A stretch of DNA of 64,000 bases from Oculina patagonica (taxonomy: Eukaryota), in NCBI RefSeq assembly GCF_052425735.1, contig NW_027558470.1:1-64000 (forward strand), given 5' to 3'. The position numbers and the translations under genes were made by a program. Below, piece by piece: positions 17,145 to 55,937 of this stretch (positions within the stretch are counted from its first letter, which is position 1; each line of letters starts with the position of its first letter). The notes below the pieces were generated by a model. That model ran no database searches. It was not told the DNA's origin and saw nothing but the letters and a program-made list of their open reading frames with translations.

Positions 17145-17371
17145 TTAAGATACATTCATTTGTTTTCTAGACTTCTGAATATTAAAATGTACAAAGTACT
17201 TCACTGCTTTCCAATGTCTGTCCTTTAAAGCCTTTGGATATTTCTTGATCGCTTCCTCGCATTGTTTTTTACCAGGGACTTTTCCTGTTCTGAAACAGTT
17301 TCCAAGCACATCATTAACAGCTGCTCTTTCATCCTTTGTCCAGGTTCTGCGGTTTGTGTAATTTCTTCGTT
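17145..17371 (-). CDS. Terminal exon: Myb/SANT-like helical domain
   Basis: RRTWTKDERAAVNDVLGNCFRTGKVPGKKQCEEAIKKYPKALKDRHWKAVKYFVHFNIQKSRKQMNVS*; acceptor ttgtttcctag; W..E / R.W..VK pattern; absent from the ORF track. Confidence 0.8.
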
Positions 17372-20300
17372 CTAGGAAACAAGTTACAAACTACTCTGAG
17401 TATTGCCTCTTGTAACTCTAAAAAGATTTTAATGATAAGGAACATTTACTTTTCTTTACTTGTAAAAAAGTAATGATTTCTAAAATATAAATTCAAACAT
17501 CTTTATGCGACCACCTCTCGTATGCACCTTGGCTTGTTGACATTAATTAGAAAAAAATCTATCGTCGCTTTTGGAAAATATTCGCCTGTTTTTTCAAAAA
17601 TTAATTCTTCTAATTTTCTTGGAAAGCGCTAATATCTCGTGATCTTTCATTTTGTTCGCCCTAAAGTTTAAAGCTTGAAAAAATTTGCACATTTGTTATT
17701 TCAATTACCAAAAATCAGAAAAATCAGTTTATGTTTCGATTTAGAAAAGATCACCTCCGTTCCCAAAAATAGCTGCAGGCCACCTTACGTAGTTTCCCAT
17801 TTTTTGTTATATTTTGAGCACTACTGTTATGTAAAAATTGATGAAATTTTATCTAACTTTTAACTTAGAACAGTATCCCCAATTGTTTTTATAGCGGCTA
17901 CTGCTCCTCCTCCTCCTCCTCCTCCTCCTCCTCCTCCAAGGTCAGTTTTTACACTTGAGGCCTCTACAATTTAAAAAAAAATGGAACCCATCCACTTACT
18001 TGAAGCTTTACGTCCCGATGTTTTTTGTTTCTTGATTTTCGTACATTCCGGTGACCCTGTAAGAAGAACAGCTGAATTAAATATTCATTCTAAATATGAA
18101 TAACAAATCCAACTGCCGGCTGTTTCAGTGTTAAGTTTTGCAAATCGAACAAGGCACAGGACACATTCTGAACAACAATATCAGTTATTTTTTACAGGAC
18201 TGGCTAAAGTGAAATTTTGATATAAACTTTTCCTGAAACAAATTCCTTCACTTGTCAAGTTGTTGGTCTTGAAGGTGAAGAAATCAGTAAACAGCTCGAA
18301 GGGGTTAAGTTTTTTCCCAGAGAATTCAAATCTGCCGAGCAATAGGCACTTTGCAGCTAGGCCATCACGTGACCTACTTTTCATAAAATTTATCGACTAT
18401 AACTTTAACCCTTTTACCCCCTAAGGTGAAAGGTCTTTTTTGGTAAATTTCAAAATATAAACTGGATATCCATATAAGATACACCATTTCAAAGGTGTTG
18501 ATCAGTTTATTTCAAAAAAAACACTTTAACAAATACATGTAAAACGGAAGCTATGTTTTTGAAAGAAATGGGTTAAAAGGTTAAAAAGAAAAAGATTTTA
18601 AAAATTGTTTTTCTCCGTATAGGTATACCACTAAACTATATCTTATTGTGTAGCTCTCAGTGTAGTAGTTAATTTCAGTTATATTGCATGTCACATATGC
18701 ATCAGCCCAAAAAAATTGAAAAGTTATAGGGGTGGTCAAACATGTCACAAGTAGGGGGGAGGTACAATTATTTTTGTTCAAAATGCACACCTCTAGGAGA
18801 CAAGTTGTGTGCCAAAAATTAAAATTAATTGGTCCAATATTGACCAAGTAATGACATTATCTGCCATATGGCACTCTTAGGTGATTTCTGTAGAATGTGA
18901 AACTACTCAAATGTTTAAAGCTGTAGCTGTACTGTAAATGCTGCAATGTTTTCCTTTGCCATCCATACTGGTTTTGGTGGTAAAAAAACAGCCACAAAAT
19001 CTGCATAAGTCTGATGTGAACGCTTCTCTTCCCTATTTTTTTGACATGAGTGGGGTTTCTTTGGTGTTTTCTGATCCACTTAATAGATGAAAACAGACTT
19101 TCACTTTGAACAGAACACCCATTTCATTTTGCATGCAAGATTGAACCAAGAACTACGAGTGGAAATAATCAATTCTTCTTCCGTAGGATACTTTATCATC
19201 AAGGATGTCAATTTTAAAATAACGATGGAAGCTGTCAAGAGATTTTTGAGAATTCAGCGACATTATTTGGCCGTCTGGTGAAACACATTTGTTGTTTGGA
19301 AACAGTCATTTTCCCTTTTCAATAAATCAAATAGATACAGTAGTTATATGTGTTTCATTTTAGAAATGAGAATACATGTACATACCTTTCAAAAGTGTAC
19401 CCGCTATTCTTTTTCTTTTGGTTGTTCCTTTTTTTCGGCTTACTGAGCCTGGAATAACAATGACAAATTCAAAATAAAAAGATCAAGTAAAATCAGGGTA
19501 GAAAATGTATATTATAAGCTACAACGAGATCTCACCTCGACTTTTCTTTTTATTGCTATCCACTTCTCTATCATCCATGTCAACAACATCATCCTTATCC
19601 ACGCTTGAATCTTCATCATCAACATTGTCGCTGCTGTCGTCACCACCACCACCATCATGTTTGATACCTGACTCTAAAAATCAAAAAATAATAAAATTTT
19701 CTTCTCTTAAATGTCCTGTCCCAGTCAAAATACAGTGTACAATCCCAGAGAATCATCTGTTTCAAACTGGTCTGAAGAAAGCGATTGTGATATTAATGTG
19801 TTACAGTTCAAAACGTGGAAGGCTCACCTGCAGGAATATGAGCTGTTCGTTTCTTTTTGTTCACTTGGAAGCCTGTGTACATGATATATAAAGCCTTAGT
19901 TCAATGAAATACCGAAAATGGACAGCTTTATTACTAAAAAAACTAAATGACAGGTTTTTCCTTGCTGCATAGCTAGCGAGAGAGATTAAGCACTTAATGG
20001 CTGGCCCGAGGGGAACAGTGAGTTTTATTTCCCCGAGCCTCTCAATGGGGAACATCGAGGATCGAGGGGAAACAAAACTCACTGTTTCCCAAGGGGCCAA
20101 TCATTAAGTTTTTTGTTATACCCCCAACTTTAAATAAAGCAAACTGCACCAGTGTAATACGTTGCAGTTTAATGAGGAGCCAAAACAGAGAAAAAAATTC
20201 CTGCAGACAAGTTGGACTTAAAAATTTCCTGCAGAAATAATTATTACCCCCCTTCCTGTAACTTCTTATGGTGGTGGTATGAAGATGGTATGAAGCCAAA

Positions 20301-23300
20301 CATAGGTTAAGTCTGCATACGAGCTTCGTGCCCCTTCAGGCCAGAGCTTATCCCAGTTTCTGTATCATGAAGAAACTAGAAGTATTTCTACACCCCCCCC
20401 CCCCCCTGGATGGGATGCTAGTCTATTACAGGGTTACCCCCAGCAGTAAATACACCGGTACCCATTTATACACCTGGGTGAAGCTAAACATGGCATGGAC
20501 ATATCAATAGTATACAAAGACATAATTGCAAAAATACTCTATTAAATTACAGACAATCAACAAAACGATGTTGTAACAAAAGCACTGTGAACGAGGATAT
20601 CAATACACACAATTCCTCGTTCTAAAAACACCAATTTAAAATTAAAGGAAGTATAAAGCCAAACGTAGCATGGCCATTTCCCATATGTACAATTACATCA
20701 TTACAAAAAAACTCAAGATCGTCAACTGACAAAACGTCGTCAAAACGGCGAGGAATGCCATGTGCACGCAAACGATGACATGAAGTGTATCCCTAGTTCT
20801 ATAAACACCGAAGTAGCTAACACAACTCCACTTGTTGGATCATGAATAAAATTATCGACTTGACAAATCAAACGATTCATACTATCTCTTTTTCGAATGA
20901 AATCTAGTTGACAATATTGGACAACCCTCGATCATCATCATCGATCCTTTTCCTGCTATTGGACGCATAAGGCCTCACAACCCTCGATGGCAATACCATA
21001 TTATATTGAAGGGTAGTGGTGAGAAAATAATTACATTCTGTATTGGGTGGAGTCAGGAATACCGAACACGTAATAACATTTTCAGCTTTGTCGCTAGTTA
21101 CATGAATTTTGACTTTAAGCCGCAGATTTGTTCAAAGAAACTGAAAGAAAATTCATATAGTTTATCTAAGCGAGGTTTTCCAAAGTCCTCAGTAATGACA
21201 AAACAGAAAAGCTCAACCAAAATGAGCTTTATTCAAACTAAAATCGTCCTGAAAACATGCCAAGCACGTGCTGTGAATTGTTAAATGACTGTTTTGAAGT
21301 AATTCCAAACAGTAACCTGCTTTTCTTCATCTTTATTAAGCTCCCTTTTACATTGTACAGTAAAAGATGCTCGAACTGTGGAAACGGCAAGAGATTAAGA
21401 TTACTGCCATTTTTTTTGCAGAAACGTTATTATTTTCGATGCGTATTTGAGCGGACACCAATTCAGTACAACGATGTCAATTTCAATCTTACAACTAATC
21501 TCAAGCCTGAAAAGTGAGACAGAAATACATACACCTTATTCGATGGTTTAATATATAATACGCGCGGATATTTTGCGAGTTGCGTAGTATTTCAATACTT
21601 TCAATAGCATCTCTGCCATGGAAAATAATATGAGCAATGAGCAAAATGTCCGCGCGTATTATATGTTAAACCATCGAATAAGGGATTTATTATTCCACTA
21701 ATTTTTCCACTTTGTTTGGGCCAGTATTCCGCAAGTTTGTTCGCCCGTCTTTTTGCCCTGTTTTACTGTGTAATAACGTGGCATATTTTGCGCGTTCTTT
21801 TGCCCTTATATGGTAAAATGGCACAATAGTGGAATAATAACATGAAATATTGACAGTTCACGCATAAGCAAAACTATAAGAAGATTGTGATGCAAATAAG
21901 AATACACTAAATACCATCAGGAGGTGTCCCTGCTGTCCTTTTCCCTTTCTTTGTTCCTTTTCTTTGGCTCAGTGAGCCTGCAAAATAATGAAGAATTTTG
22001 ACTTTGCACCATTTTTCTTGCCTTGCATAGATCTAGTGTCGATCTTTGTTTTTTGAGTCCATTGTAATAAGCAGCCAGCTTTAGTTAGGAACACTAACTT
22101 TCAATAGCATTTCTGCCATGGAAAATAATATGAGCAATGAGCAAAATATCCGCGCGTATTATATGTTAAACCATCGAATAAGGGATTTATTACTCCACTA
22201 ATTTTTCCACTTTGTTTGGGCCAGTATTCCGCAAGTTTGTCCGCCCGTATTTTTGCCGTTTTACTGTGTAATAACGTGGCATATTTTGCGCGTTCTTATA
22301 AGGCAAAATGGCGCAATAGTGGAATAATAACATGAAATATTGACAGTTCACGCATAAGCAAAACTATAAGAAGATTGTGATGCAAATAAGAATACACTAA
22401 ATACCATCAGGAGGTGTCCCTGCTGTCCTTTTCCCTTTCTTTGTTCCTTTTCTTTGGCTCAGTGAGCCTGCAAAATAATGAAGAATTTTGACTTTGCACC
22501 ATTTTTCTTGCCTTGCATAGTTCTAGTGTTGATCTTTGTTTTTTGAGTCCATTGTAATAAGCAGCCAGCTTTAGTTAGTAACACTAACTTTCAATAGCAT
22601 TTCTGCCATGGAAACAAAGAGTCTGGCTCTTGTAATTGCTTGAATTTCAATGCAATGGGGACTTGCTATTTAATAAACTTCGCAGCCTCCCACAGAGCGT
22701 ATGCTCTTTTATATGTGTCATGGGGGAAGATTTATTATTTCAAACTCGCATTATTGGTCTTAACATAGACATTTTCAGCACAATCAGAGTGCATCAAGGC
22801 ATGCATCAGAGACTATCTGCCTTCAGAATACATTATGCCATAAACGTTTCTTAATTTTTGTGAATGTTATTGATCTGAGAATTAACCAGCAAAGAATTTA
22901 ATACTTACAAGTATCTACATTGCTCTCACTTCCACCATCGTCAATGGCATTGACAGACTCTAAACATAAATAAATATTTCAATTTGCCTCTCTCTCATAA
23001 TGCATACAGTGAACATTTATCATCGTCATTCCATTCTCTCTGAAAGTGCAATAATTCAGTTGCTGTTCAACATGAAAGTGATGCTTTATATGCATGTTAT
23101 TTATTTTTTAGATATTTAGTTTCTACCCCAGCCTGAGAAATGTGGCTGATTTGTCTACTGAAGAAACGCTTTGCACTCTTTTAATTACATGGCCAACAAT
23201 TAGGCAATGGCATATTAAAGTTAGCTTATTCTTAAGATACCAAATCTAAAATGTGTGGTTCCAGAAAATGTCCATAATCCACCCACATAAGGGATGGGAA

Positions 23301-26300
23301 ATTCCTGGGCGTGGGAGGGGTCTCAAAAGGCCAAACATTTTAAGGAAATGTATGAAGCTTAATTGGAATTTCCAGAGGGGGTGAGGGGTCTTAGGAAAAA
23401 TCCCTTCCGTGCGGGAGGTATGGATAATTTATGGAACTACACAATGCCACAAAAATATCATGCTCATAATCTTAAACAGGTAAAATAAGAGAAATAATGT
23501 ACACCTCAATATCAAAATAATAGTTTAGTAATACATATAGTGATTCTTAAAAGTTCCTTTACTTACCAGGGCTGCTGGGGTTCTCTTGTGACATTTCAAG
23601 GTCAATTTCTGTTAGAAAGAAAAAGAAAAATGATCTACAATTGGAGTATTCGGGCCAGTATTCCGCAAGTTTGTTCGCCCGTCTTTTTGCCCTGTTTTAC
23701 TGTGTAATAACGTGGCATATTTTGCGCGTTCTTATAAGGCAAAATGGCGCAATAGTGGAATAATAACATGAAATATTGACAGTTCACGCATAAGCAAAAC
23801 TATAAGAAGATTGTGATGCAAATAAGAATACACTAAATACCATCAGGAGGTGTCCCTGCTGTCCTTTTCCCTTTCTTTGTTCCTTTTCTTTGGCTCAGTG
23901 AGCCTGCAAAATAATGAAGAATTTTGACTTTGCACCATTTTTCTTGCCTTGCATAGTTCTAGTGTTGATCTTTGTTTTTTGAGTCCATTGTAATAAGCAG
24001 CCAGCTTTAGTTAGTAACACTAACTTTCAATAGCATTTCTGCCATGGAAACAAAGAGTCTGGCTCTTGTAATTGCTTGAATTTCAATGCAATGGGGACTT
24101 GCTATTTAATAAACTTCGCAGCCTCCCACAGAGCGTATGCTCTTTTATATGTGTCATGTGGGAAGATTTATTATTTCAAACTCGCATTATTGGTCTTAAC
24201 ATAGACATTTTCAGCACAATCAGAGTGCATCAAAGCATGCATCAGAGACTATCTGTAGTGCATCAATGTTCCTGCAGAACACATTATGCCATAAACGTTT
24301 CTTAATTTTTGTGAATGTTATTGATCTGAGAATTAACCAGCAAAGAATTTAATACTTACAAGTATCTACATTGCTCTCACTTCCACCATCGTCAATGGCA
24401 TTGACAGACTCTAAACATAAATAAATATTTTAATTTGCCTCTCTCTCATAATGCATACAGTGAACATTTATCATCGTCATTCCATTCTCTCTGAAAATGC
24501 AATAATTCAGTTGCTGTTCAACATGAAAGTGATGCCTTATATGCATGTTATTTATTTTTTAGATATTTAGTTTCTACCCCAGCCTGAGAAATGTGGCTGA
24601 TTTGTCTACTGAAGAAACGCTTTGCACTCTTTTAATTACATGGCCAACAATTAGGCAATGGCATATTAAAGTTAGCTTATTCTTAAGATACCAAATCTAA
24701 AATGTGTGGTTCCAGAAAATGTCCATAATCCACCCACATAAGGGATTGGAAATTCCTGGGCGTGGGAGGGGTCTCAAAAGGCCAAACATTTTAAGGAAAT
24801 GTATGAAGCTTAATTGGAATTTCCAGAGGGGGTGAGGGGTCTTAGGAAAAATCCCTTCCATGGGGGAGGTACGGATAATTTATGGAACTACACAATGCCA
24901 CAAAAATATCATGCTCATAATCTTAAACAGGTAAAATAAGAGAAATAATGTACACCTCAATATCAAAATAATAGTTTAGTAATACATATATAGATTTAGT
25001 GATTCTTAAAAGTCCCTTTACTTACCAGGGCTGCTGGGGTTCTCTTGTGTTATTTCAAGGTCAATTTCTGTTAGAAAGAAAAAGAAAAATGATCTACAAT
25101 TGGAGTATTCACTTAATATAAACCTATATAATCCTTGAAATGTTTTAGAGACAACCATAATCATGTTCCTTTAACTTTATTCTAGCACAGGATGTAAAAT
25201 AATTTGTATAAAAGATACTGGATTAAAGGGTCATTTTCTTTACTTATAAATTATTAAGTAAAATTCATTTTACACCATGCACAGAAAATGTGTTTCTTCA
25301 AGTTTCTGGAAACTAGGGTGTAATCTTTAAATATTGAAATAATAACTATTACATTTAAAAAATGCTCAACTGATTATGAATTTTAACCATTTGCATTTAA
25401 AGCTTAATTAGTAGTATTATATTTAGAAAACTTATGTGCAAGGATCTTGCTGTATCTGCTTATAAGATGGTTATTACCATTTAGCTCTATCTCATCCAAC
25501 TTCTTTCCTGCCAACTTTGATGCCTTTCCTTCATCAACAGCTATGAGCAGTTTGCTGACTTTTGCAAGTTCCAAGGTACTCTCTTGCAGGCGGTAGAAGT
25601 CCCTGTGCACACTGATGTCATGCCCCAGATGTTTTGCCAGCCAGTCCAGCTCTGAATTGGTCATGTCAACAATCTGGCACACAGTTGCCACATACTTCCT
25701 TAGTTTTGTACTTGTAATTAACTGTGGGGATTTTACATTGGCACGAATGGCAACAGCTTTAAGACAGTCCCATCCCCTTAAACTTTTGCGGGAATTTCGA
25801 TTGGCTCTGGCAAAAACATAAGGATTGTCAGGATGAACTCCAGCTTCACTTCTGTGATGAATGAGAGCATCGATTGCTTCCTTGACTTCCAGTGTTAGGA
25901 GAATTGGCACTTTCCTACCTCTTTTCCCCTTAATTTCCACCATGTCCAAGCTAAAAATAAAACATGAAGTCCAGTTACTGTATTTACTTGAATAAGCGCC
26001 GCGGCGCTTATTAAATTTTTGGCACCTCAAGTGCGGCACTTATTCAAGGGCCGCGCTTATTTGAGGGCGGCGCTTATTTAAAATTTGGACGCCACAAGGA
26101 ATCTTATATTTTACAGTTATTGAAAAAAGCGTCTTTTGATTGTCAGTGTATGTCTCTTGCTGAGACAGAAGTGGCGCTAGCTGTCCTGGCAAAGTTTGCG
26201 GCCTTCACAACATTTACACAACTATTTATTGTAAGAGTGGTGAATAGAAAAACTAATCAGCGGGCAATAAAACAATCACTCGAAACTGCAAAACATCGCT

Positions 26301-29931: not shown

Positions 29932-29968
<37 letters not shown>

Positions 29969-30528: not shown

Positions 30529-30559
<31 letters not shown>

Positions 30560-34820: not shown

Positions 34821-34855
<35 letters not shown>

Positions 34856-40800: not shown

Positions 40801-43800
40801 CCTATTGTGGATAACTCCCTAGTGAAGTCATCTACTTTATAAGTTGATAAACGCATTAACATTTACCATACCGTACATGTATGTATATAATTACTGCTAA
40901 ATTGAACAATTCTTTTAAAAGTAGCTGAACTTGCAACACTTTACTGCTGTTACAGTTTCTGTTATTGTTAGTTATCTTAATATTTATTAAAGTTTTGTTT
41001 TGAACATTTGGTTATTTCTCGAAAAATTTAATTAGCGCCCTGTCGCGAATAAGCGCCCTATCTCGATTAAGCGCCCTCCCTTGAGGTGCAAAAAGTAAAT
41101 AAGCGCCCCGGCGCTAAATCGAATCATTACGGTAAATTGGGGTTTTTCTGAAAGTTTCATTCTTGATTTACTTGAAAGCGCTCTAACAGACTTTTCTACA
41201 ATTTCGTCAACATATAGTCAATCTACTAAACTTTAAAATATCAAAAATAAAAACCAAGGGTCAATCTAGATTCCAAGTAAATCAAGCTTGTTTAAGAACA
41301 AAAGAAAACGTCAATTGTTGCTATGATAACCTAGAGTTTGTGACTTAGTGAAGGGTAAAAAAATTAAAATTTGATCATATTTCATCATTATGGTGTATTT
41401 TGGCAAAAATCGAACATTGGCTTCCTAGATAATTTTAATTTTCAAAACAATTCACCCTTCGGCCAAAAAAACTACATCGATCAGCCTCCTTAAAATAAAG
41501 CCTGTTACTATCAGGTGCATGAAGCAGGCCCATAAGATGAACTCATTTTATGACTCATTTTCATGTGGTCAGAGTACAAAAAAATATGTGCGAAATGAGC
41601 ACAAAATTAATATCACATGATTATATGAATTATTTTGTTCTCCACAGGACATGCTTACAGTGTGATCACTGTAAGCAAAGTTATTTTGACTGGTCCTACA
41701 CGCTCACCTTAAACTCACTAAACATTGAAACGTAAATATTTTTATGGTATTTGTTGACAGGTATTTCTTCATTTAACACAGTTTTTCCATGGATTTTTGT
41801 GTGAAAACAAGAACATGTGCGTTGCTTAGTAACCAGGCATTCGATCGGAAGCAAAAATTGGACTGGGGCGAGAACGAACTGAAACAAAACAACATGCATT
41901 CTCACCTCCAATTAGCCCTTTTGTTTCTCTTAGCCGACTTGGCACGAGAAAACGGAGGGCTCTGGGGACATAGGATTTTTGAATTTATTTGAATTTTTTT
42001 GATTGGCTGTTTGGAACAAAGAATTCCTAAATGGAAGTCGAAAACGTAACAACTCTCTCATACATTCATTTGAAATGTCATGACTGCATACATGAAGACC
42101 GGAAGTCCTAGAATCTAGGACTGGAAATCCTGTGTCCCCAGAGCCCTTCGTTTCCTCGTGCCAAGGCTCAGCCGGCTAAGAGAAACGAAAGGGCTATGCG
42201 GGTGAGAATGAACAAGATGGAGGCATTTGGGTTTCGTGGCTATCCTATCGATAAAAAGAGATTTGGTAGTCATCAGTTGGAGATAAACTTGTTACATTAA
42301 GAGAGTTTCGTAAGTAGTTCTGCTAATTTGCCATCAAAGTGCTAAATGGGGAAGAAACAGAAGGCAATAGTTTGCATCTACCATACGAATACTCGTGTTT
42401 TTTTTCTCACTCGTGGTGTATCAATATTTATTCTGTTGAAAATATAGGCCATCGTCGACACTGCAAACAGTTTTTTGGGGCTGTCAAACTTGCAAAAGCA
42501 ATGACCAATACTCCCTTGTAGTTGAATTAAATATTAATTTGCATACCTTTCCATAAAAGTGTCAATTCACGAAAATTTTTGGCACCATTTCCAAATGTTC
42601 CCGCAGATAAGCTGCACCCTCGATTTCGAGGGAAGATGTTGGGAAAAAAAGGTGCGGCTTATCTGCGGGTTTTTCACGGAAATAAAAAGTAGAGAGATGC
42701 CTGGAATAAAAATTATTTTTTACCCCATGCTGATGTTTGAGTGAATTTTAAGTATGTGTTCCCAAGCTTATGCTTTACAGCATAGTCAAAGATGCTTGTA
42801 GAAAGTACTATTACTACCATTACAAAAAAAATTAAAAAGAATGACTTGAATACCACAATGACTTGCATCCATCCTGAAAGAAGAAGAGGAAGTTTCCCAC
42901 ATCTGGTGAATAGTTATCTTCTCTTTGGCATCCTTCCTCATATGAGATCAACTCTCCTTTGTATTCAAGTAAAAAGTCATTTTTCAAAAATGGCCTCGCT
43001 GTAAACACACCTCTCCCTGTAAAGATCACACAGTAAAGGTCATTCCCTTAAAATTATTTCAACATGTATACCCCTTGTGTTAAATCCAGTTTTGTTTGAT
43101 GAAAAGGTACAAGGGTACATATTCTTTATAAGGGTATGTTACCATTGTATATCATGGGCTCATAAACTCTGTTACAGCCCGTTTTTGATATATATACAGT
43201 ACTGTGCAAAAGTAATGCAAACAAAATTTGTTGACATTCATAACTTTTCGTGGCTTTTCGACAAAAAAATTGCAATATTTCGCTCAAAGCGAATTTGCGG
43301 CGAAAAAGTGGCCTTTTTCGCTTGGCCTATTGTGTAAAATGTCGTGAAATTTCGCGCAATAATTCGCTTGCTTCGAAATTGACTTGGAAAAATTCGTGTG
43401 AAAATTTGCTCTGTTCGAAATACTCCCTACAAAATTTTCTGCATTCAAATGTCTTTTGGCCTTTCTTAAAGCTATAGCTTTGCCCTGCTTCATGACTATA
43501 AAGTATGACTCTTTGAGGTGCTGCTATTCAAACGAAAAGACGATGACCATTGTTTTATGACAAATCGTTTTATTTTACTTTAAGCATTACCGGAGAAAGC
43601 CTTTAAAACTCGACCAAGCAATTAGCCCCCTACCCCAGTCTGTGATTCAAAGACAAAACTTGATTCCTCTTTTTCTCTGTTTAAGTGGCAAAGTTTATAC
43701 TCTTCTTTTCGATCGCACAAAAAAAATATACAGTAAAATTCCGGTTATAAGCCCTGGGCTTATACAACGTCATAAGGGTTTTTGGGCTTATATCCTGGAG

Positions 43801-46800
43801 GGCTTATAAGCGGAATAAAAAAAAAACGTCCCGTAACGGGCCACGGAAGTGTTGATCGAAATGCATTTTTAAGTTAAAAACGCATAATAAAGCAACATTT
43901 AGCCCTTTTCAGTACTCTCATCTGGCAGAGGGGTCTTATATCCGGGGAGGGGGCGGGGGCTTATAATCGGATGTATTTTTTTGTTTCCAGGTAGATGGGC
44001 CTATAATTTAACTAGAATTTTACGGTGAATCCGGGATACTGGAACCCAGACTTCCACGTGCCCGAAGTGTGTCAACAATCAACATGGCGAACAAGTCACA
44101 TGGGGAGCGTGTTGCTGGTGTATGTTTCACCATTTGTTTGATCCACTAGATCCAGGCAAAGAGTAGATATCGAGGTGGTGAAAGATTTTTACTTTCTCGA
44201 TATTTTTGCGTACAAAGTAGGCCGTACTTTACAAGGTAAGATGTTCAAAGAGTGTCTTGTACGATCAACATGTAAACTTTGTGCCCGCCATGTGCTTTCA
44301 TGTACAGCTGTAAACAAGAATCTAACTCTAGACAATTCGTTAGCTTGAATTATGTAGAGGTATAAATTAAGTTTTCTCATTTCCAAAAGGGGCTGAGGTG
44401 TTTTCAGTAGTACAACCTTAATCTGTTCAACCCTTGTCTTGTTTTCGAAGTAGGCTTCTAAAAACATTGGTATTGTGCTTGTTTATGTTGCAAATATAGC
44501 CTTTTCAGTCGTATACTTTGAAGTTTTAGAAACTTTTATGTCCCCCTAGCAATGTTTTAGTTATATTTTACTTTGTTGAGGCTGAAATAATTTATTTTAT
44601 TGTTATGAACTTGATGGAACGCGCTTCACGTTAGTTTATGAAAATGTCGAACGAAAGTTACATGCAGCGAATTTCGCTGCTTCAAATTTCGATAAGTCAT
44701 TGTTTGTCTACCTCAAAAATTCGCTATTTCGAATTTCGTTGTCTCGAATTTTCGACGAACTTCGCGATTTTTTCGCGTGGACCACAACGAAATGTGTCTC
44801 GATAATTCGAAGAAATTTCTCCAAAAATTCGCGAGAACAAAAAACGAATTTCGACGAATTTTGTTTGCACTACTTTTGCACAGTACTGTATTTTTTATAA
44901 ATAATACTATTAACATTTGTAAGTGATTTTGAGATGGTAACACAGAAATATATCATTTGGTGGCTAGTTGGGAGAAAATATAAAACTGTATTCCATATTA
45001 AGCAGAGCTGCATAGCAACAAAACCCAAAACGTAGAAAATTATTTTATTTCTCCTAATGTTGTCTGAAAGTGGCAATAAACTGTGTTGCAGTTCAATCAT
45101 CCTTTGAGAAACTAGAAAGGAAATGTTATGCTGTTGTAAAAAATTTGTTAACTTGCCAAGAGTTACCAATATGAAATTGAATGTAGACTACATGAATACT
45201 TAGCTAGCATGCATAACAGTATAACAGTGTTTGACTGTGAAAAGGAATTAAATCACTTGTGGTTCGAGTTATCAGGAGGTTTGAGAAATCGGGATTCCTG
45301 TTAAGGTGATTCCCTAGTATTGCATTGCGCATCCCTTCGGTAGCGTTCCTTTTTTGCAATGGTAATTCCATATATAGGATTCTCTGATTCTTAAACAAAA
45401 CTGGACCTCTAGCTTCTTTTCTCCAAGTTTTAGGGAGTTTAAATTCGAACACGCGGTTTGGGACTGGCACTTGTTATGCGCGCAATGTCAATTTTTTCAA
45501 AGCAGACCTGTGTTCCCCTCTTAAAGATTCACCATTTATTCTGCCGGTCAGCATCAACTTTCGAGCGATGAACATATCAATCACACAGAGAACTTTGCTC
45601 GAAGTTAACGTTGTTGAGCTGCAAGCGAATTTTCTTCTAGTTAGGGGCGAATTATCACGAATTATCACTGAGGTAAGGAAAATTCGAAGAAATATCGGCC
45701 TTTGTTCTTGCGAAATTTAGCTTGAAATGATGTGAACTTTTTGCATGACTTTTCGAGCGAAATTTCGCGAGAACAAAGAAAGAAATTTGTGCTTTTCGGT
45801 TGCATTACTTTTTCACAATACTGTAGCAATACAACATTTTTTCAAAGCAGGTGCTCCCCTCTAAAAGATTCACCATTTAGCAATACAAAACACTACAAAA
45901 TGGCTTTCCACCGAAAATCATCTTCAGCGATCCTTTAGCAACTGCTCTAGATCTGTACTTAATAAGGACACCCGTTAAGTGCTCAAGAATGAGGTATTTT
46001 ACAATTATTCTACGAACCAAGGTTTTTATGGTTGACTCTACAAAATCACAATACATACCTATGTACTTGTCAATGAACCTCTCCTCAAAGCCCTCTTGGT
46101 CTTCACCTGTAGTTAACTGCTCTGGTAGAAGTTTCCTCTAAAATACAAGTGATTACCGGTATATATAATTACACGGGCTGCACAGAGGGAGGGGCTAGGG
46201 GGGCTTTAGCCCCCCTCCACACACACAGACAGACACACTTTTTTACAGAAAAAAAAATATACCGTAATCTTAATAAGTAAAAAACAAACAAACAAATCAA
46301 AGGGTCTAAAACTATTTTGTATGATGAAGTACATGTATGAGCAGCATTATGTGCAGAAAAGATGAAAGCACTGGTGGTGTTCCATAAAATCTATCTCTTC
46401 TTTAAACCTCTTAAAATAACCGGCACGCATACATGCATGCACAGGCGATGACGCTTTACAATGTTGATCCCAGAAATTGCATTTTTTATTTATTTTAATT
46501 TTTGATTTGCTTTAACTACAAAACGAACTTGCAATACATTACATACGTACATTATAATAAAATAAGCACATTTAATTATTATGAACTTCATTATTTGGCA
46601 ACAGAAAGGCCCAGGATTGATTTCCACACAAAGTCGATACTGAAGATTGTGTGACATTTTTTCGTATTGAAATGTAATCAAGTCAACACCGCTAACAAGA
46701 ATCACTTAAATGTATTCATGCAACTTATCAAACAAAACATTTTAGATCAGCTAAATCAGCAATTGGGTAGAAATTCTTTTAGAATTCTGGCTTCTCATAC

Positions 46801-49800
46801 ACATAGGAATACGGATACCGTCACTGTTTTATTTTTAATGGCTTGAGATCAATATTATCTAAAACAGAAAAAGGAAGATATCGATGGCGAGTCGCGAAGG
46901 AAAGGGGAAATAACATTAACCTAAACTTACATTATTATCGATAACAATGCACGCCAAAACAAACAAAGATTAGATAGCTCACCTTTGCAATCTAATCAAG
47001 ATACTGCCATCGGTTGGCCTTTTTATACTAGAACGGTCTCAAAAGTTATGACACTAAACGGTTTTCACTCGTCAAATTCTTATCGCATATGCCGATTTTG
47101 ATGAATACACGTACAACGGTTAAAAAGTTCTGTAAGCAGTACATCATTCTCTCCTGACCCCATACCTCCGTTCCACTGTAGAAATCAAACGCGTTTTGCA
47201 TGATGTACGCTATGTTGATTCATAATCATGACAATCAAAGATGGCATACCGAAACTGAGTAAACAATCAAAGTGCATAGTTCCCAGTGCTACCCGGTTGG
47301 AGTAATCGTAACATTGCCCGTCCACGGGCGACAACATATAGGCGTCACCACCTAATTACACTCAAATCACTGCCCCAATTCTGCAATACAATAATGTATT
47401 TATAGTAAAACGAACTCAACCGGGCCACCCAACGTTTTTTAGCCAATCACAAGACAAGTTCAAAACAAAAGAATTGGAAGGGCAATTTTAACTCTTCTCT
47501 TGACTAGATTCGGTGCGAAGGCATGCTAAAGTGTTGTTTTTACGACAAAAAATATAATTTTGTTCAGTTCGTTAACGGAATGAATGAAAGTCTGCCGGTA
47601 ATTTGGAACATTGGATGGAATCAACGTAAATAAGTTTACCAAATGACGGCCGGGAATTTTGAAGACTGAACGGACTCAACGAAAACTTACCGAATCATGG
47701 CCTGGAATGAAGACAAAACGGACTCAACATAAATTCGTTTACCGAACTGACACGGCCTTTTCTTACATTTAGATAATTTTAGAGACTTACAAATTTCTTA
47801 TCTTGTACTTTTGTTGTGGTACGGAAAAAGCAAGTGGCATTTTCGAGGAGAGTGTACCGGAGATCACTCAAATGTAACACATGCCATCAAAATAATCTGA
47901 TTTGAAATGTTGAAATTTGTCCCGCAAAATTTGTGATATTAGCCCAGTTTTGAGAATTATAATAAACAAGGATCTTTTGAATGAAATGTTGGGTCTTTTC
48001 TATTGTCTGTTGTTTCCAGTTAGGGCCTTTAAAAAAAATGATTTTGATCCCCCGGGCAGAAGGGGGGATCAAAATTTTTTGCCATCCGTCGGGGGGGGGG
48101 GGGGGGGTGTATTTTTTCTGGAATAACCCAATGCTCTAGACACATGAACACATTGCGGAACTATGTGTTACGTTAGCTCAATGTATTGTTATACTGTATT
48201 AGAAAGCAGGGAGGGCAAGGGTTTAACAAACGGGCAGGTACGCACATTATCTTTTTTCCCCTCTTATGTGTTTTTTCATCCTTCCTTCTCCCCTCCCAAG
48301 GCATGGCATATTCCCTCACATGATTTAATTCCAATTTGCAAAGCCAAGACTGTATTTAATCCTGCAGCATGAAATTTGCCAACAAATGACTAAAATTCTG
48401 GAAATACTTGACCTTTAAATTGTATTCCTTGACACTATGTATTCTCTTCAGGAAGTTAATTTCCAGGTTTCTGATAGGTATGAAAAATATGTGTAATTAT
48501 ATATAATGAATATGACAAATATAATGATTGTATTTTTTTTAAAAAATAGGTTCAGTTCTTTTATCTGTAAATTTGAATGACACATAGACAACAAAGGTCA
48601 AAGTACATGAATAACTGAACACATGTAGCAAGAAAGACAACTTTATGGACCATGACTTTTAAGACTAAAATTTTATAGTCATAAGGATGCATGCTCTTGA
48701 CATAGCTGATAACTATCTCATCACTATTTCACTGAGTTTTACATTTGCCAACATTAATTTTCATCAGTTATGCATTGGTCAGCAGAATTACAAAAAAAGT
48801 TTACGACCCACCGACTGGAACGTTTGAGCGAAAAAATTACTAAAAAATATATTCATTTGTGAACACCTTTCCAAATAAAAAGCTGGTGATAAATTGTCTA
48901 CAATGTAGTACGTTTTGTAGTTGTACTGAGCAAATTATGTAAGATATATTATTATAATTTACAAGGGGCAGTCTTTGATACTTTGAATTCAACATTATTG
49001 TTGCTAAACACACTTTGACTTAACGGAATGGAAAAAAATCATGACTTCTTTTAAAGATGCTAGTGTAAATTAGTGCCAAAACTTCTCTTTCTATGGAAAA
49101 AATGTTTTTCAGTCTGTTCTTTCTTTATGAATGTTCATTATTGTCAGGTTGTTAAATCTCTCTAACATCACTGTTGAGTGAAAATATGTTTTTATTCTTC
49201 ATGCGGGGGAAACTGAACGATCGTTCACCAAATGCACTTGTTACTAGATTTACCAATTTAAGCTTGCAAACCATGATTACATGTTGTTACTTAAATTATC
49301 CTTTACAAACTAAATAGAAACTTAATTTCTACTACAGTAGGTTCAAATCAGCTTAGTGAGAGGTAAATTTTTCAATTTTCAAAGGATGTGCCAAGTGATC
49401 AACATGTACTTGATTAAGTGATTATTGATAACAAAGTTTTAGAAATTGCAATTAAAAGTCGCTCAAACGTTCCAGTTGTGACGTCAAAAAGTGCACAAAA
49501 TTTAGAGAAGGTATTCCTTATGACTATAAAATTTTAGTCTTAAAAGTCATGGTCCATAAAGTTGTCTTTCTTGCTACATGTGTTCAGTTATTCATGTACT
49601 TGGACCTTTGTTGTCTATGTGTCATTCAAATTTACAGATAAAAGAACTGAACCTATTTTTTTTAAAAATACAATCGTTATATTTGTCATATGCATTATAT
49701 ATAATTACACATATTTTTCATACCTATCAGAAACCTGGAAATTAACTTCCTGAAGAGAATACATAGTGTCAAGGAATACAATTTAAAGGTCAAGTATTTC

Positions 49801-51413
49801 CAGAATTTGTAGTAAATAATAAAGATGGTAGATTTTAAGCTCGGTGATAAACAGTGAAGAAATTATTCTACATGACACGAGCGTGGGACAAAGAAAAAAA
49901 TCTGAGTCCCCGACGGGAATCGAACCCATGGCCTCCCAGATACTGGTTGGGCGCTCTAACCAACTGAGCTACGTAAGACTCGCTGTGAGCTAGGCCATTT
50001 ACTAGGTTGATAAGTGACACGCGTCCTGCATACTGCTAGGATCAGCAATGTCGAAATCATCAAATTTGTAGTAAATAATAAAGACGGTAGATTTTAAGCT
50101 CGGTGATAAATAGTGAAGAAATTATTCTACATGACACGAGCGTGGGACAAAGAAAAAAATCTGAGTCCCCGACGGGAATCGAACCCATGGCCTCCCAGAT
50201 ACCGGTTGGGCGCTCTAACCAACTGAGCTACGTGAGACTCGCTGTGAGCTAGGCCATTTACTAGGTTGATACGAATTTTAGTCATTTGTTGGCAAATTTC
50301 ATGCTGCAGGATTAAATACAGTCTTGGCTTTGCAAATTGGAATTAAATCATGTGAGGGAATATGCCATGCCATGTCAGAATATATAGAGAGACTGACAGT
50401 TATTAGTAACAATCACTTGCACACATTTCAAGTCCTGCAGTTTATTTCCTTGTGGAGGTTAAAGGGACTATGTCACCCAAATTTATATTTGTGTCACAGG
50501 AAACCTAAAAATAATAGTCCATTTTTATTAAAACTTGGTATATTAGAGCACTTAAACTGTTAACGAGCATCTTTGGCTGCCGATGGCTCCGATGGAAACA
50601 GGCCATGAATATGCCATAGAAAGACCATGAAAATCAATGATAAAATCATTGGGTTTTAAAGTAGGATATTCATTTTGCTTGTGTGCCTTCCCCTACCCCA
50701 TAAAAAAAGGTGGAGAACCATTGAATATTGAGGGTTAACTTTCACGAGCCATGAATTCATAGGCCATAGGAAGACCATGAAAATTCCATCAATTTACCAT
50801 AAATAAAATCAACAAATATACATGAGCTCTGGTTTCTTTGGGTACATGTTGAAGAAATGAATAAATTCTAAAAAATGTGGAAATTGCATATATTATTGAA
50901 ATTCCATGATTTTTTTTATTTGTACTCAATCGAATCAGGAGCCCAAAAGCGAGTGGCAATTTTCATAACCTGTTGAATGAATGTCAATTGTGTGCAACCC
51001 CAGTGCACCCTTTATATTACTCCACATTGTTCAATTCTAACTATTCAAATCATGACTGGCATCTTAAAAGCTCTTTGACATTCCGTGACAGAATGAAGCG
51101 TACCTTTGATCATTTGATGCATTCCTAGCATGTACAAATGAGTTGCCTATTGAATTTTTTTTATGAAAACAAGCAAAACCAGTATTGAAGTGTGTTGACA
51201 ATTCACATGTAGGCCTGACACACCCCTAACAAATTTCAAAACTAACTTTTCGCATGGAAAACTCAAATCAAAGAAAAATCAAGAGATATTCATTACTTTC
51301 TTTTGAGCAATAGATAATGCTTTCTGAATACCATAAGAGAACTAAGGACTACAAAAAGCAACCTTTATAAAATGTATACTCACAGACTGCAAGCATCTTT
51401 TCCTCCCTGCCAT
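17145..51413 (-). CDS. Multi-exon SET-domain / tyrosine-recombinase fusion protein (Crypton-like), 1234 aa (1381 aa with the GC-donor exon array)
   Basis: Hand-spliced GT-AG exons with matching phases: 51384-51413, 46059-46137, 42854-43016, 39895-40091, 36853-37053, 36162-36221, 32003-32041, 31079-31218, 30487-30685, 27786-29049, 25478-25950, 25026-25067, 24360-24410, 23841-23903, 23567-23608, 22909-22959, 22405-22467, 21915-21977, 19536-19673, 19386-19448, 18000-18056, 17145-17371 = 3705 nt with no internal stop. Junctions rebuild conserved motifs (DKYI-GRGVF, KSLC-LDAS, LIKR-LDMVEIKGKRG). The small linker exons are less certain than the domain exons. Confidence 0.8.
18409..18580. mobile_element. 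Short piggyBac-like MITE
   Basis: TTAA|CCCTTTTACCCC ... GGGTTAAAAGG|TTAA, imperfect TIR. Confidence 0.45.
20305..20482 (-). mobile_element. Truncated SINE body
   Basis: CCCCTGGATGGGATGCTAGTC...GGTTACCCCCAGCA...GGTACCCATTTATACACCTGGGTG resembles a common cnidarian SINE central domain (recognised from memory). Confidence 0.5.
21598..22614. repeat. ~500-bp tandem duplication carrying a 63-nt exon
   Basis: CTTTCAATAGCAT(C/T)TCTGCCATGGAAA at 21598, 22098 and 22588; units nearly identical. Confidence 0.9.
22218..25110. repeat. ~1.44-kb tandem duplication carrying three exons
   Basis: 22218-23651 repeats as 23652-25110; junction GGAGTATTC|GGGCCAGTATTCC. Confidence 0.9.
25478..29049 (-). CDS. Tyrosine recombinase region (exons 27786-29049 and 25478-25950)
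   Basis: Zn fingers CFYC..HLENCH and CPYC..HAKKC. Catalytic set: R (FNKRRGGE), K (KGKRGRKV), xxxR (TKLRKY), H (HLGH), Y (RDFYRL). Confidence 0.9.
25978..26502. mobile_element. Tc1/mariner-type MITE in the YR intron
   Basis: TA|CTGTATTTACTTGAATAAGCGCCGC ... GCGGCGTTTATTCGAGTAAATACGG|TA. Confidence 0.8.
26863..27070. repeat. ~45-bp tandem repeat (AACGGGCGACCAAGTCGTTCGAACGAGTGGA)
   Basis: Four to five degenerate units. Confidence 0.75.
29500..29910 (-). pseudogene. Decayed Penelope-like GIY-YIG endonuclease fragment
   Basis: Minus strand has CAGCGWCYVGETSQCFETRKKEH and RKTLEAWHT...NNNSKPIPNQY in different frames; next to (AAT)n at 29911-29968. Confidence 0.75.
33081..33954. repeat. 435-bp near-perfect tandem duplication (intronic)
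   Basis: 33081-33515 repeats at 33516-33950 with ATGT microhomology at the junctions. Confidence 0.9.
36329..36804. mobile_element. Tc1/mariner-type MITE
   Basis: TA|CAGTAGAACCCCTATTAAGTGGCCACC ... GGTGGCCAGTTAATGGGGGTTCTACTG|TA. Confidence 0.8.
36853..37053 (-). CDS. Cys8 zinc-finger exon of the SET-YR gene
   Basis: CYTC-x8-CIKC-x4-C-x4-C-...-CKNC; phase-1 symmetric exon of 201 nt. Confidence 0.7.
37390..39750 (-). repeat. Minisatellite (~167-bp full and ~126-bp deleted units) whose full units contain a 63-nt candidate exon
   Basis: Full exons at 37701-37763, 38245-38307, 38845-38907, 39018-39080, 39185-39247, 39352-39414, 39519-39581; four shorter units lack the donor half. Confidence 0.85.
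37512..37616. mobile_element. Tiny TA-flanked MITE
   Basis: TA|CCGTAAAAACCCGCAGATAAGCCGCACC ... GGTGCGGCTTATCCACGGGTATTTACGG|TA. Confidence 0.75.
39895..46137 (-). CDS. SET domain (PR-Set7/KMT5A-like), exons 46059-46137, 42854-43016, 39895-40091
   Basis: GRGVFT..F.KNDFLLEYKGELI...FLFFF...CLDA...LGRLVND...N...LYALKDIAVGEELRYDYG..LPWR. Confidence 0.9.
40192..41425. mobile_element. Kolobok-like long-TIR element with nested TA MITE (40637-41132)
   Basis: TTAA|GGAAGCCAATGTTCAATTTTTGCCAAAATACACCA matched by TGGTGTATTTTGGCAAAAATCGAACATTGGCTTCC; arms ~250 bp. Nested CCGTGATGATTCGATT / AATCGAATCATTACGG with ATAAGCGCCC repeats. Confidence 0.7.
41897..42210. mobile_element. Mutator-like MITE
   Basis: ~85-bp TIRs CATTCTCACC... 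/ ...GGTGAGAATG; 9-bp TSD AACAACATG / AACAAGATG (1 mismatch). Confidence 0.75.
43197..44888. mobile_element. Non-autonomous Tc1-like element with nested MITE (~43731-44026)
   Basis: TA|CAGTACTGTGCAAAAGTAATGCAAACAAAATT ... AATTTTGTTTGCACTACTTTTGCACAGTACTG|TA. Confidence 0.85.
48300..50371. mobile_element. Foldback element with ~390-bp near-identical inverted arms; right arm split by a SINE
   Basis: 48300-48687 is the reverse complement of 49515-49808 joined to 50273-50371. Confidence 0.85.
49809..50272 (-). mobile_element. Tandem dimer of a tRNA-derived SINE-like unit (~259 bp)
   Basis: tRNA-like heads at 49904-49981 and 50163-50240 with A box TAGCTCAGTTGG, B box GGTTCGATTCC and acceptor-like stem GAGTC../..GACTC; TSD GAATTT (49803-49808, 50273-50278). 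Confidence 0.8.
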
Positions 51414-53497: not shown

Positions 53498-53577
53498 CGT
53501 GATGTGTAGAATGAATGTCGATGACGAATGTGTTGCTTTTTTTTTATACTTTTTTGACAATGACTCGTTTACAAAAT

Positions 53578-54941: not shown

Positions 54942-54990
54942 GGTTCATTAATAAACCTTCCAGATGCAGCTTCTTTATATCCTTTTTTTC

Positions 54991-55377: not shown

Positions 55378-55412
55378 CGTTGTGTTCTAAACTCGACACG
55401 CAACTCGGACTT

Positions 55413-55916: not shown

Positions 55917-55937
55917 TCCTTTTCTGGTCCTGTGTGG

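What the first reader, a model, noticed from the sequence alone, without database searches (positions are those of the whole stretch)
17145..51413. Hidden 34-kb gene fusing a histone-methyltransferase SET domain to an intact tyrosine recombinase
Seen: 22 exons with matching phases give one stop-free frame: SET, Cys8 finger, acidic linker, two Zn fingers, YR (R-K-xxxR-H-Y), linker, Myb-like. The frame survives although more than a dozen insertions and duplications sit in its introns. Known: YRs mobilise Crypton and DIRS elements; PR-Set7-type SET domains monomethylate H4K20. Inference: a transposase carrying its own chromatin writer, which could mark its element or target site or counter silencing. 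Similar uncharacterised proteins exist in fish and invertebrates, as I recall, but I know of no described function.
Basis: partly seen in the sequence, partly recalled or inferred. Interest (0 to 1): 0.9.

Follow-up and report, generated by a model that had tools for sequence, protein, structure and literature searches.

The report
SET-domain tyrosine-recombinase fusion gene
The minus strand carries a long multi-exon gene that joins a KMT5A-like SET domain, zinc fingers, an apparently intact tyrosine recombinase and a small DNA-binding domain; it belongs to a very large animal gene family, probably of Crypton-like jumping genes, for which I found no published description.

Summary
On the minus strand, 13 exons with canonical AG/GT borders join into one stop-free frame of 991 codons that ends at the stop at 17145-17147. 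Two more in-phase exons are plausible. The domain order is SET, Cys finger, acidic stretch, two zinc fingers, recombinase, repeated linker, three-helix domain.

The recombinase call is supported:
- An AlphaFold model of a 40-50% identical relative (pLDDT 90.8) matches only tyrosine recombinases and type IB topoisomerases in the PDB.
- The window keeps R, K, xxR, H and Y.
- dN/dS against two relatives is about 0.2.

The same SET-to-recombinase order occurs in more than 100 RefSeq "uncharacterized" proteins of fish and a frog. In a loach, four 94-98% identical copies of at least 20 kb lie on four chromosomes and share a sharp 3' end, which looks like transposition.

Three points are not shown:
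- No transcript from this genome joins SET to the recombinase.
- Mobility of this copy is untested.
- The "H4K20 writer" idea is unproven, because the His of the SET NHS motif is missing.

Verdict: a real, probably undescribed variant of tyrosine-recombinase elements.

The parts
42854..43046 (-). SET domain exon 1 (GRG motif and the EYKG strand). It starts in phase 1 and ends in phase 2, inside a Cys codon.
   Evidence: Pfam SET E=1.5e-4. KMT5A is the best PDB sequence match. Splice sites. Intron position and phase are identical to the loach gene.
39895..40091 (-). SET domain exon 2 (RLVND..., EELRYDYG, PW motif). A GT donor in phase 1 follows right after PWRNQK.
   Evidence: Pfam SET E=2e-5. 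PDB matches to KMT5A and Set1. The junction with exon 1 recreates the conserved Cys-(V/L)DA(T/S). The fish exon ends at the same place.
36853..37053 (-). Candidate exon for a Cys-rich (about 8 Cys) finger, phase 1-1.
   Evidence: Open frame with AG and GT in phase 1. Only weak FYVE/RING-like Pfam hints. No homologue was found.
31153..31218 (-). Candidate acidic exon (seven Asp in a row, D7), phase 1-1.
   Evidence: No homology support.
30487..30681 (-). Candidate poly-Asp exon, phase 1-1.
   Evidence: It overlaps a (CAT)n tract. No homology support.
27786..29049 (-). Large exon: two CxxC...HxxxC/H zinc fingers, the helical N-terminal (core-binding-like) domain, and the first part of the catalytic domain with Arg I (FNKRRGGE).
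   Evidence: 5323 related clusters. AlphaFold and Foldseek on relative P0029. Arg I is invariant. No ATG precedes the first finger, so upstream coding exons are required.
25478..25950 (-). Recombinase C-terminal exon: beta-hairpin Lys (GKRGRK), TxLRK (Arg II), LGH (His) and the nucleophile Tyr (HRDFY).
   Evidence: The junction to the large exon is confirmed by uninterrupted relatives P0287 and L005. dN/dS is 0.09 against L006.
21915..24410 (-). Tandemly duplicated linker mini-exons, all phase 1-1: 24410-24360, 23903-23841, 22959-22909, 22467-22405 and 21977-21915.
   Evidence: Similarity to the linker repeats of L005. Splice sites and phases. Tandem duplication of a 1.46-kb unit and a 490-bp unit.
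19386..19673 (-). Further linker exons, both phase 1-1: 19673-19536 (acidic, candidate) and 19448-19386 (basic).
17145..17371 (-). Last exon: a three-helix homeodomain/Myb-like domain followed by the stop codon (17145-17147). It starts in phase 1.
   Evidence: Conserved in 144 stored relatives. AlphaFold pLDDT 88.7 with three helices. The best PDB fold matches are homeodomains and Myb domains, but with E above 1. The fish exon starts in the same phase, about one codon away.
43047..51413 (-). Unverified.
   Evidence: No homology and no RNA data. The only support is an ATG-containing open stretch near 51396.

Best explanation
The window holds one intact, multi-exon gene of a metazoan-wide family of tyrosine-recombinase proteins that is best read as the recombinase of Crypton-like DNA elements.

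The core of the family is two zinc fingers, a Cre/Xer-like two-domain recombinase and a C-terminal three-helix DNA-binding domain. In this copy, as in many vertebrate copies, a KMT5A-like SET domain is spliced onto the N-terminus.

Shown here:
- The exon chain and its single frame.
- The recombinase fold, in a relative.
- Conserved catalytic residues.
- Purifying selection.
- The recurrence of the fusion in other animals.
- Dispersed near-identical copies in a loach.

Inferred:
- The recombinase cuts and rejoins DNA through a phosphotyrosine link. Excision would give a circle, and integration would occur at a short shared sequence, as proposed for Cryptons.
- The fingers and the helical domain recognise element or target DNA.
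- The SET module is an accessory lysine-methyltransferase-like part that acts on chromatin or on a partner protein. Its non-canonical cofactor motif leaves its activity open.
- This 34-kb copy may itself no longer move.
For: Gene model:
- 13 exons with AG/GT borders give one 991-codon frame, and two more exons fit.
- All junctions after SET are phase 1.
- The intra-SET intron is identical in position and phase to the loach gene. The exon after SET and the last exon begin or end at matching places.
- L005 joins the large exon, the recombinase C-terminal exon, the linker and the last exon.

Recombinase:
- The AlphaFold model has pLDDT 90.8.
- All top 50 PDB matches are XerH, XerA, Cre, lambda Int, IntI, Tn1549 Int or type IB topoisomerases.
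- Viral matches are integrases and VLF-1.
- 4 of 57 relatives hit Pfam Phage_integrase, best E 3.7e-6.
- R, K, R, H and Y are conserved in the window and in at least 55 of 57 relatives.

Selection: dN/dS is 0.21 against L006 and 0.18 against L005. Introns are about 80-83% identical, against 88-90% for exons.

Family:
- 5323 clusters in corals, beetles, molluscs, fish and frog.
- More than 100 annotated SET-recombinase fusion proteins.

Mobility in loach: four copies on four chromosomes are 94-98% identical over at least 20 kb. They share a 3' end at ...GTAGGTA(TG)n, and one copy sits inside an intron of a PLC gene.
Against: - No RNA evidence from this genome joins SET to the recombinase.
- The window's recombinase falls in a clade whose other members, as predicted, lack SET. 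The vertebrate SET-bearing members are in the other clade.
- A 44% identical relative, L009, has no SET within 10 kb upstream.
- If the donor after SET exon 2 is not used, a stop follows 11 codons later. That would give a SET-only protein built like canonical KMT5A.
- I could see only one copy from this genome, so mobility here is untested.
- Introns full of later insertions, together with selection on the coding sequence, fit a resident gene as well as a transposon.
- The first His of the HxxR box is Thr in the whole family, so activity is not guaranteed.
Confidence: 0.55

Rival explanations
1. It is a domesticated host gene. A former element's recombinase-SET fusion is now fixed in place and works as a chromatin or transcription factor, as the Crypton-derived ZMYM, KCTD1 and KIAA1958 genes do. 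It differs from those in still carrying its catalytic residues.
For: - The locus is 34 kb, with introns that have accumulated duplications, satellites and inverted-repeat insertions, yet the frame is intact and dN/dS is about 0.2.
- An 88% identical genomic relative, L006, shares the intron and homologous intron sequence, as an orthologue would.
- The all-phase-1 exon design, with duplicated linker exons, is typical of host modular genes.
Against: - Known domesticated Crypton genes have lost most catalytic residues (PMC3212892). Here they are all kept.
- The family is huge and patchy, with recent dispersed copies in loach.
- Several paralogues at 54-88% identity exist in related samples.
- Selection on the coding sequence is also expected in an active element lineage.
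Confidence: 0.25
2. There are two separate genes that happen to be neighbours: an upstream SET-only, KMT5A-like gene ending just after exon 40091-39895, and a downstream zinc-finger-recombinase gene with its own first exon.
For: - A stop codon lies 11 codons past the proposed donor, which would give a protein with a C-terminal SET like KMT5A.
- One loach copy is annotated as separate SET and recombinase genes.
- Many fish SET-only models exist.
- Coral, beetle and mollusc relatives are predicted without SET.
- No SET lies within 10 kb upstream in L009.
Against: - Both modules are the same two modules, in the same order and on the same strand, as in more than 100 fused vertebrate proteins.
- The window's SET scores about 95-100 bits against the SET of fish fusion proteins. 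Its two halves sum to about 59 bits against KMT5A. It also shares the family's RLVND signature in place of RLINHS.
- The donor after SET lies where the fish gene splices.
- Phases match through every later exon.
- The large exon has no ATG before its first zinc finger, so it needs upstream coding exons.
Confidence: 0.17
3. The exons are decayed transposon remnants lined up by chance, and the single frame is an artefact of picking splice sites.
For: With many GT and AG sites in 34 kb of AT-rich DNA, some in-frame chain can always be built.
Against: - About 2.4 kb of homology-supported coding sequence has no stop or frameshift.
- dN/dS is about 0.2.
- The exon borders are confirmed by L005, P0287, L006, L009 and the fish genes.
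Confidence: 0.03

Closest known systems
Crypton DNA transposons (tyrosine-recombinase elements; groups F, S, A, I and V in Repbase)
   Same: A tyrosine recombinase is the only DNA-processing enzyme and there is no reverse transcriptase. The genes contain introns. Neither inverted nor long terminal repeats are evident. The host range is similar (cnidarians, insects, molluscs, fish). Fungal Cryptons also carry a C-terminal DNA-binding domain (PMC3212892).
   Different: [quoted passage not shown]
- There is no Pfam DUF3504 signal.
- The first His of HxxR is Thr.
- Some members carry a SET domain, which I found described for no Crypton.
- The loach units are at least 20 kb.
- The relation to the poorly documented CryptonV group could not be tested.
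SETMAR (Metnase): SET domain fused to a mariner transposase in anthropoid primates
   Same: A histone-methyltransferase-type SET domain sits N-terminal to a transposase in one spliced protein. The fusion arose by replacing the stop of a SET gene with a splice donor.
   Different: SETMAR is a single domesticated host gene with a DDE transposase and a SUV39-type SET. Here the partner is a tyrosine recombinase and the SET is KMT5A-like. The fusion is multi-copy and widespread, and it seems to travel with the element.
KMT5A / PR-Set7 / SETD8 (H4K20 monomethyltransferase)
   Same: It is the closest solved structure by sequence for the family's SET domain (91 bits for the fish protein; for the window). 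The GRG, EY(K/H)G and E-E-L-x-Y-D-Y-G motifs and the C-flank PW motif are kept.
   Different: The cofactor motif RLINHS is RLVND(D/E)H in fish members and RLVNDTPSRKANC in the window, which has no His. In KMT5A the SET domain ends the protein. Here it is followed by about 850 more residues.
Crypton-derived host genes with DUF3504 (ZMYM2-4, QRICH1, KCTD1, KIAA1958, WOC)
   Same: They are recombinase-derived domains combined with zinc fingers in nuclear regulators of animals.
   Different: Those genes have lost most of the catalytic tetrad and are single-copy orthologues (PMC3212892). Here the catalytic residues are conserved and the family is multi-copy. There is no DUF3504 match.
Transposable elements that carry chromatin or DNA-modifying modules (my own knowledge: DIRS1 methyltransferase-like domain, retrotransposons with captured DNMTs, KDZ transposons with TET/JBP, chromoviruses)
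   Same: The concept is the same: a mobile element encodes a module that writes or reads epigenetic marks.
   Different: None of those combines a protein-lysine SET domain with a tyrosine recombinase in one polypeptide.

Membership tests
Tyrosine recombinase superfamily (lambda integrase / Cre / Xer fold) | Two-domain fold: a helical core-binding domain plus a catalytic domain | tested here: met
   The AlphaFold model of relative P0029:187-756 (40-50% identical to the window) has pLDDT 90.8. The top 50 Foldseek PDB matches are all tyrosine recombinases or type IB topoisomerases, with probability up to 1.00, best E 3.5e-4, 380-450 aligned columns and target-normalised TM about 0.5. The window's own spliced product could not be submitted.
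Tyrosine recombinase superfamily (lambda integrase / Cre / Xer fold) | Catalytic residues Arg I, beta-hairpin Lys, His-x-x-Arg II, His/Trp III and the nucleophile Tyr | tested here: inconclusive
   Arg I, Lys, Arg II, His (the LGH motif, 9 residues before Tyr, as I recall for XerD) and Tyr are present in the window and in at least 55 of 57 relatives. The His of HxxR is Thr in 56 of 57. The residues were placed by motif, not by structural superposition.
Tyrosine recombinase superfamily (lambda integrase / Cre / Xer fold) | Sequence-profile membership (Pfam PF00589) | tested here: inconclusive
   The window's exons give no hit. 4 of 57 relatives hit Phage_integrase, best E 3.7e-6. A profile search of PDB sequences found only zinc fingers.
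Tyrosine recombinase superfamily (lambda integrase / Cre / Xer fold) | Covalent 3'-phosphotyrosine intermediate and strand exchange | not testable with these tools
   This needs biochemistry.
Crypton DNA transposons | A tyrosine recombinase with no reverse transcriptase or RNase H in the same unit | tested here: met
   There are no RT or RNase H hits in the exons or in full-length relatives. The 13-exon product has no such region.
Crypton DNA transposons | Mobility: several dispersed copies with common ends | tested here: inconclusive
   In loach, four copies on four chromosomes are 94-98% identical over at least 20 kb. Three of them share a 3' end at (TG)n, and one lies in a host intron. The 5' end was not reached. 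For the window's genome only this one copy was visible.
Crypton DNA transposons | Recombinase sequence groups with a named Crypton group (A, F, I, S or V) | not testable with these tools
The CryptonA-derived DUF3504 profile gives no hit.
KMT5A / PR-Set7-type SET methyltransferases | SET fold with GxG, the catalytic Tyr (ELxYDY) and the C-flank | tested here: met
   Pfam SET hits both exons. KMT5A is the best or near-best PDB match. GRG, EYKG, EELRYDYG and PW are present.
KMT5A / PR-Set7-type SET methyltransferases | N-H-S/C cofactor-binding motif | tested here: not met
   The window has RLVNDTPSRKANC. Fish members have RLVND(D/E)H. KMT5A has RLINHS. By established knowledge, replacing this His inactivates several SET enzymes.
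KMT5A / PR-Set7-type SET methyltransferases | H4K20 monomethylation | not testable with these tools
   This needs an enzyme assay.
DIRS / Ngaro / PAT tyrosine-recombinase retrotransposons | Reverse transcriptase and RNase H encoded together with the recombinase | tested here: not met
   No RT or RNase H appears in the gene or in relatives.
Myb/SANT or homeodomain-like DNA-binding domains | Three-helix bundle with a helix-turn-helix | tested here: inconclusive
   The AlphaFold model of the window's own last exon (pLDDT 88.7) has three helices. The best PDB matches are homeodomains and Myb domains with TM 0.6-0.77 but E above 1. Pfam Myb is hit by 1 of 60 members at E 0.004.

The most novel reading that the evidence does not exclude
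The SET-recombinase fusion is an ancient, functional unit of a mobile element, shared by cnidarian-like invertebrates and vertebrates. The recombinase carries its own lysine methyltransferase, or a methyl-lysine- or histone-tail-binding pseudo-enzyme. That module marks or reads chromatin at the element or at its target, and so steers integration or escapes silencing. This would be the first transposase of any class that travels with a histone-type SET module as part of the active element. It would also explain the many fish genes annotated as "KMT5A-A-like".
Probability: 0.2. Interest if true: 0.85.

Novelty: new variant of a known kind. Interest (0 to 1): 0.62.

Why it matters
Tyrosine-recombinase elements are the least understood eukaryotic DNA transposons. 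No animal Crypton has been shown to move, and none is known to carry a chromatin enzyme.

This family is very large: 5323 clusters at 50% identity. It has no Pfam model for its recombinase and is labelled "uncharacterized" throughout RefSeq. Its SET halves are mis-named "KMT5A-A-like" or "set-1-like" in fish annotations.

If the fusion is active, it gives a direct handle on how a mobile element might manipulate histone marks. It would also provide a natural recombinase with built-in chromatin targeting.

Even on the cautious reading, the result corrects annotation and defines a new recombinase family with a confident structural model.

Tried and rejected
- Pfam on the individual exons does not call the recombinase. 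A profile of 57 relatives against PDB sequences finds only zinc fingers. The fold had to be shown by structure prediction.
- I could not fold the window's own spliced recombinase, because spliced products cannot be passed by reference. A relative was used instead.
- Searching all minus-strand open stretches against about 380 relatives supported only five exons. The Cys finger, the acidic exons and the 5' exons have no homologues.
- The tree of recombinase domains did not put the window with the vertebrate SET-bearing proteins, so a single origin of the fusion is not shown.
- L009, a 44% identical relative, has no SET within 10 kb upstream.
- The SET search returned only fish proteins and no canonical invertebrate KMT5A, so a SET phylogeny with outgroups could not be built.
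- Four contig look-ups found nothing on record (P0155, P0171, P0296) or returned no DNA (P0009).
- The 5' end of the loach element was not reached.
- Literature searches for SET plus tyrosine recombinase or Crypton, for CryptonV and for the assembly accession gave no description of this family.
- The organism remains unidentified. The nearest named relatives are corals and beetles at about 40% identity.
Full report
**What is in the sequence**

The window has no N. All coding signal of the finding lies on the minus strand.

Five stretches are conserved in relatives:
- Two SET-domain pieces: 43046-42854 and 40091-39895.
- A 1264-nt exon: 29049-27786.
- A 473-nt exon: 25950-25478.

Each has a canonical AG acceptor and GT donor.

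Joining the two SET pieces recreates the conserved Cys-(V/L)-D-A-(T/S) of KMT5A. Joining the two recombinase exons gives ...QQLIKR-LDMVEIKGK..., which is uninterrupted in the 77% identical protein P0287.

**The gene model**

Beyond the five conserved exons I found:
- A Cys-rich exon (37053-36853).
- An acidic exon (31218-31153).
- Six short linker exons between 24410 and 19386.

All of these are flanked by AG and GT, and all are phase 1 at both ends. Five of the linker exons lie in a tandem duplication. They resemble the repeated linker of the relative L005.

The 13 exons together read as one frame of 991 codons, whose only stop is the terminal one. Two more phase 1-1 acidic exons (30681-30487 and 19673-19536) also fit.

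I could not check the remaining exons or the 5' end at 51413. Nothing there has a homologue and there are no RNA data. The large exon has no ATG before its first zinc finger, so upstream coding exons must exist.

**Independent support for the splicing**

L005, a JGI contig 76-87% identical to the window, aligns to 28654-27784, then 25949-25478, then after a linker to 17379-17163. It is therefore a spliced or intronless copy of the same gene type. It carries one frameshift and one in-frame stop.

L006, 88% identical, is genomic and has the same intron with a homologous intron sequence. L009, a 44% identical relative from another genome, has the same intron between the recombinase exons and the same last exon.

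The loach gene (L003) compares with the window as follows:
- The intra-SET intron is at the identical position and phase, inside the Cys codon.
- The SET exon also ends right after the PW(R)xK motif.
- The last exon starts in the same phase, about nine codons before the conserved Trp.
- Fish have no intron inside the recombinase.

**The recombinase**

The 447-aa ORF of the large exon finds 5323 clusters (at 50% identity) with E up to 0.001. Pfam does not recognise the exons.

An alignment of 57 relatives (A1) gave an AlphaFold model with mean pLDDT 90.8. Every one of its top 50 PDB matches is a tyrosine recombinase or a type IB topoisomerase. These include XerH, XerA, Cre, lambda Int, integron IntI and Tn1549 Int, with 380-450 aligned columns for the recombinases. 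The viral library returns phage integrases and baculovirus VLF-1. Four of the 57 relatives reach Pfam Phage_integrase, best E 3.7e-6.

Aligned to this set, the window keeps five of the six residues:
- Arg I (FNKRRGGE).
- The hairpin Lys (GKRGRK).
- Arg II (TKLRK).
- His (LGH).
- The Tyr nine residues after that His.

Each is present in at least 55 of 57 relatives. The first His of the HxxR box is Thr throughout the family.

The caveat is that the model is of a 40-50% identical relative.

**Selection**

Against L006, dN/dS is 0.21 over 578 codons and 0.09 for the C-terminal exon. Against L005 it is 0.18. Intron identity is 80-83%, against 88-90% in exons. The recombinase has been kept by purifying selection.

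**The SET domain**

The closest solved structures are KMT5A/SETD8. The GRG, EYKG and EELRYDYG motifs and the PW flank are present.

The cofactor motif differs, however. It is RLINHS in KMT5A and RLVND(D/E)H in the fish fusion proteins. In the window it is RLVNDTPSRKANC, which has no His. By established knowledge, replacing that His abolishes activity in several SET enzymes. H4K20 methylation by this protein is therefore an open guess.

The RLVND signature speaks for the window's SET being of the same kind as the fish fusion SETs. So does the score of about 95-100 bits against fish fusion SETs, compared with about 59 bits for the two halves against KMT5A.

**The C-terminal domain**

The window's own last exon folds with pLDDT 88.7 into three helices. 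The best PDB matches are homeodomains and Myb domains with TM 0.6-0.77, but E is above 1. "Myb-like" is acceptable only as "homeodomain/Myb-like three-helix domain".

**The family and its mobility**

Proteins with SET, then the recombinase, then the helical domain in that order are annotated as "uncharacterized protein" in dozens of teleosts, in Polypterus and in a frog, often with many isoforms. SET-less members occur in corals, beetles, bivalves, a limpet and zebrafish. Fish SET-only models named "KMT5A-A-like" or "set-1-like" belong to the same family.

In the loach Misgurnus, four copies lie on four chromosomes:
- They are 94-98% identical over at least 20 kb, introns and flanking tandem arrays included.
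- The three copies that reach the 3' end lose similarity at the same point, ...GTAGGTA(TG)n.
- One copy lies inside an intron of a phospholipase C gene.

That pattern is what a large DNA element would leave. The 5' end was not reached.

I found no paper that describes a SET-recombinase element. Repbase's CryptonV group is barely documented and could not be compared.

**What remains doubtful**

In the recombinase tree the window lies in a clade whose other members have no SET, while the vertebrate SET-bearing members lie in the other clade. L009 has no SET within 10 kb upstream. If the donor at 39895 is not used, a stop follows after 11 codons, giving a KMT5A-like SET-only protein.

So "two neighbouring genes" is not excluded. 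I give it about 0.17.

A resident, domesticated gene is another serious rival, at about 0.25. This copy is 34 kb long, has collected many later insertions, and is still under selection.

**Verdict**

The finding is real. It is one probable gene for a SET, zinc-finger, tyrosine-recombinase and helix-turn-helix protein. It belongs to a huge animal family that is apparently undescribed and most likely derives from Crypton-like elements.

The "transposase with its own chromatin writer" idea is attractive and not excluded. Its three key steps are all unproven: a single transcript here, SET activity, and mobility of this copy.

Noticed in passing
window 52943-63900, minus strand: A GC-rich block (about 50% GC against 36% elsewhere) lies just upstream of the gene and is packed with long ORFs. 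These include an rve integrase with a chromodomain (61735-62886), ORFs of 765, 257 and 456 aa, a 192-aa ORF, and a P-loop ATPase with a weak Pox_A32 hit (55938-56648). It looks like a Polinton/Maverick-type virus-like element. No polymerase is seen before the window ends.
   Followed up: partly
window 21597-25110: A tandem duplication (a 1.46-kb unit twice at 97% identity, plus a 490-bp unit) duplicates two short phase 1-1 linker exons. The linker of the protein is therefore growing by exon duplication.
   Followed up: yes
window 37616-39708: A satellite array (126- and 167-bp periods, about 2 kb) fills the intron between the SET exon and the Cys-finger exon.
   Followed up: no
window 48389-48687 / 49515-49813 and 40191-40465 / 41156-41426: Two inverted-repeat pairs (97.7% and 83% identical) suggest foldback or TIR-type insertions in the 5' introns. 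A 259-bp tandem duplication lies at 49804-50271.
   Followed up: no
window 7415-7590 and ORF 6856-7515 (minus); L005 2077-2249 and 2634-2744: The spliced relative L005 carries two copies of a 175-nt segment about 130 nt after its stop codon. That segment is homologous to the start of a 219-aa ORF lying 9.5 kb downstream of the gene in the window. It could be a 3' part of the unit, a second ORF, or a shared repeat. This is unexplained.
   Followed up: partly
L003, L004, L007, L008 (loach Misgurnus anguillicaudatus): The young copies, each at least 20 kb, carry a 180-bp tandem array near the 5' side, 48-bp and 43-bp arrays inside, and end at a (TG)n tract. In one copy the annotation splits SET and recombinase into two genes.
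   Followed up: partly
proteins P0383-P0502: Well over a hundred fish proteins named "N-lysine methyltransferase KMT5A-A-like", "set-1-like", "SETD5-like", "EHMT2-like" and so on are SET-only models of this family. These are likely annotation artefacts of element copies rather than true KMT5A paralogues.
   Followed up: partly
P0008, P0011, P0046, P0130 (pipefish, seadragon, archerfish, Eleginops): Very long predicted proteins (2400-4150 aa) contain several SET and recombinase units in a row. This suggests tandem arrays of the unit that have been merged into single gene models.
   Followed up: no
window 25950-27785 versus fish L003 17245-19290: The intron that splits the recombinase is present at the same position in the window, L006 and L009. 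It is absent in the loach gene, where zinc fingers and recombinase form one 2-kb exon.
   Followed up: yes
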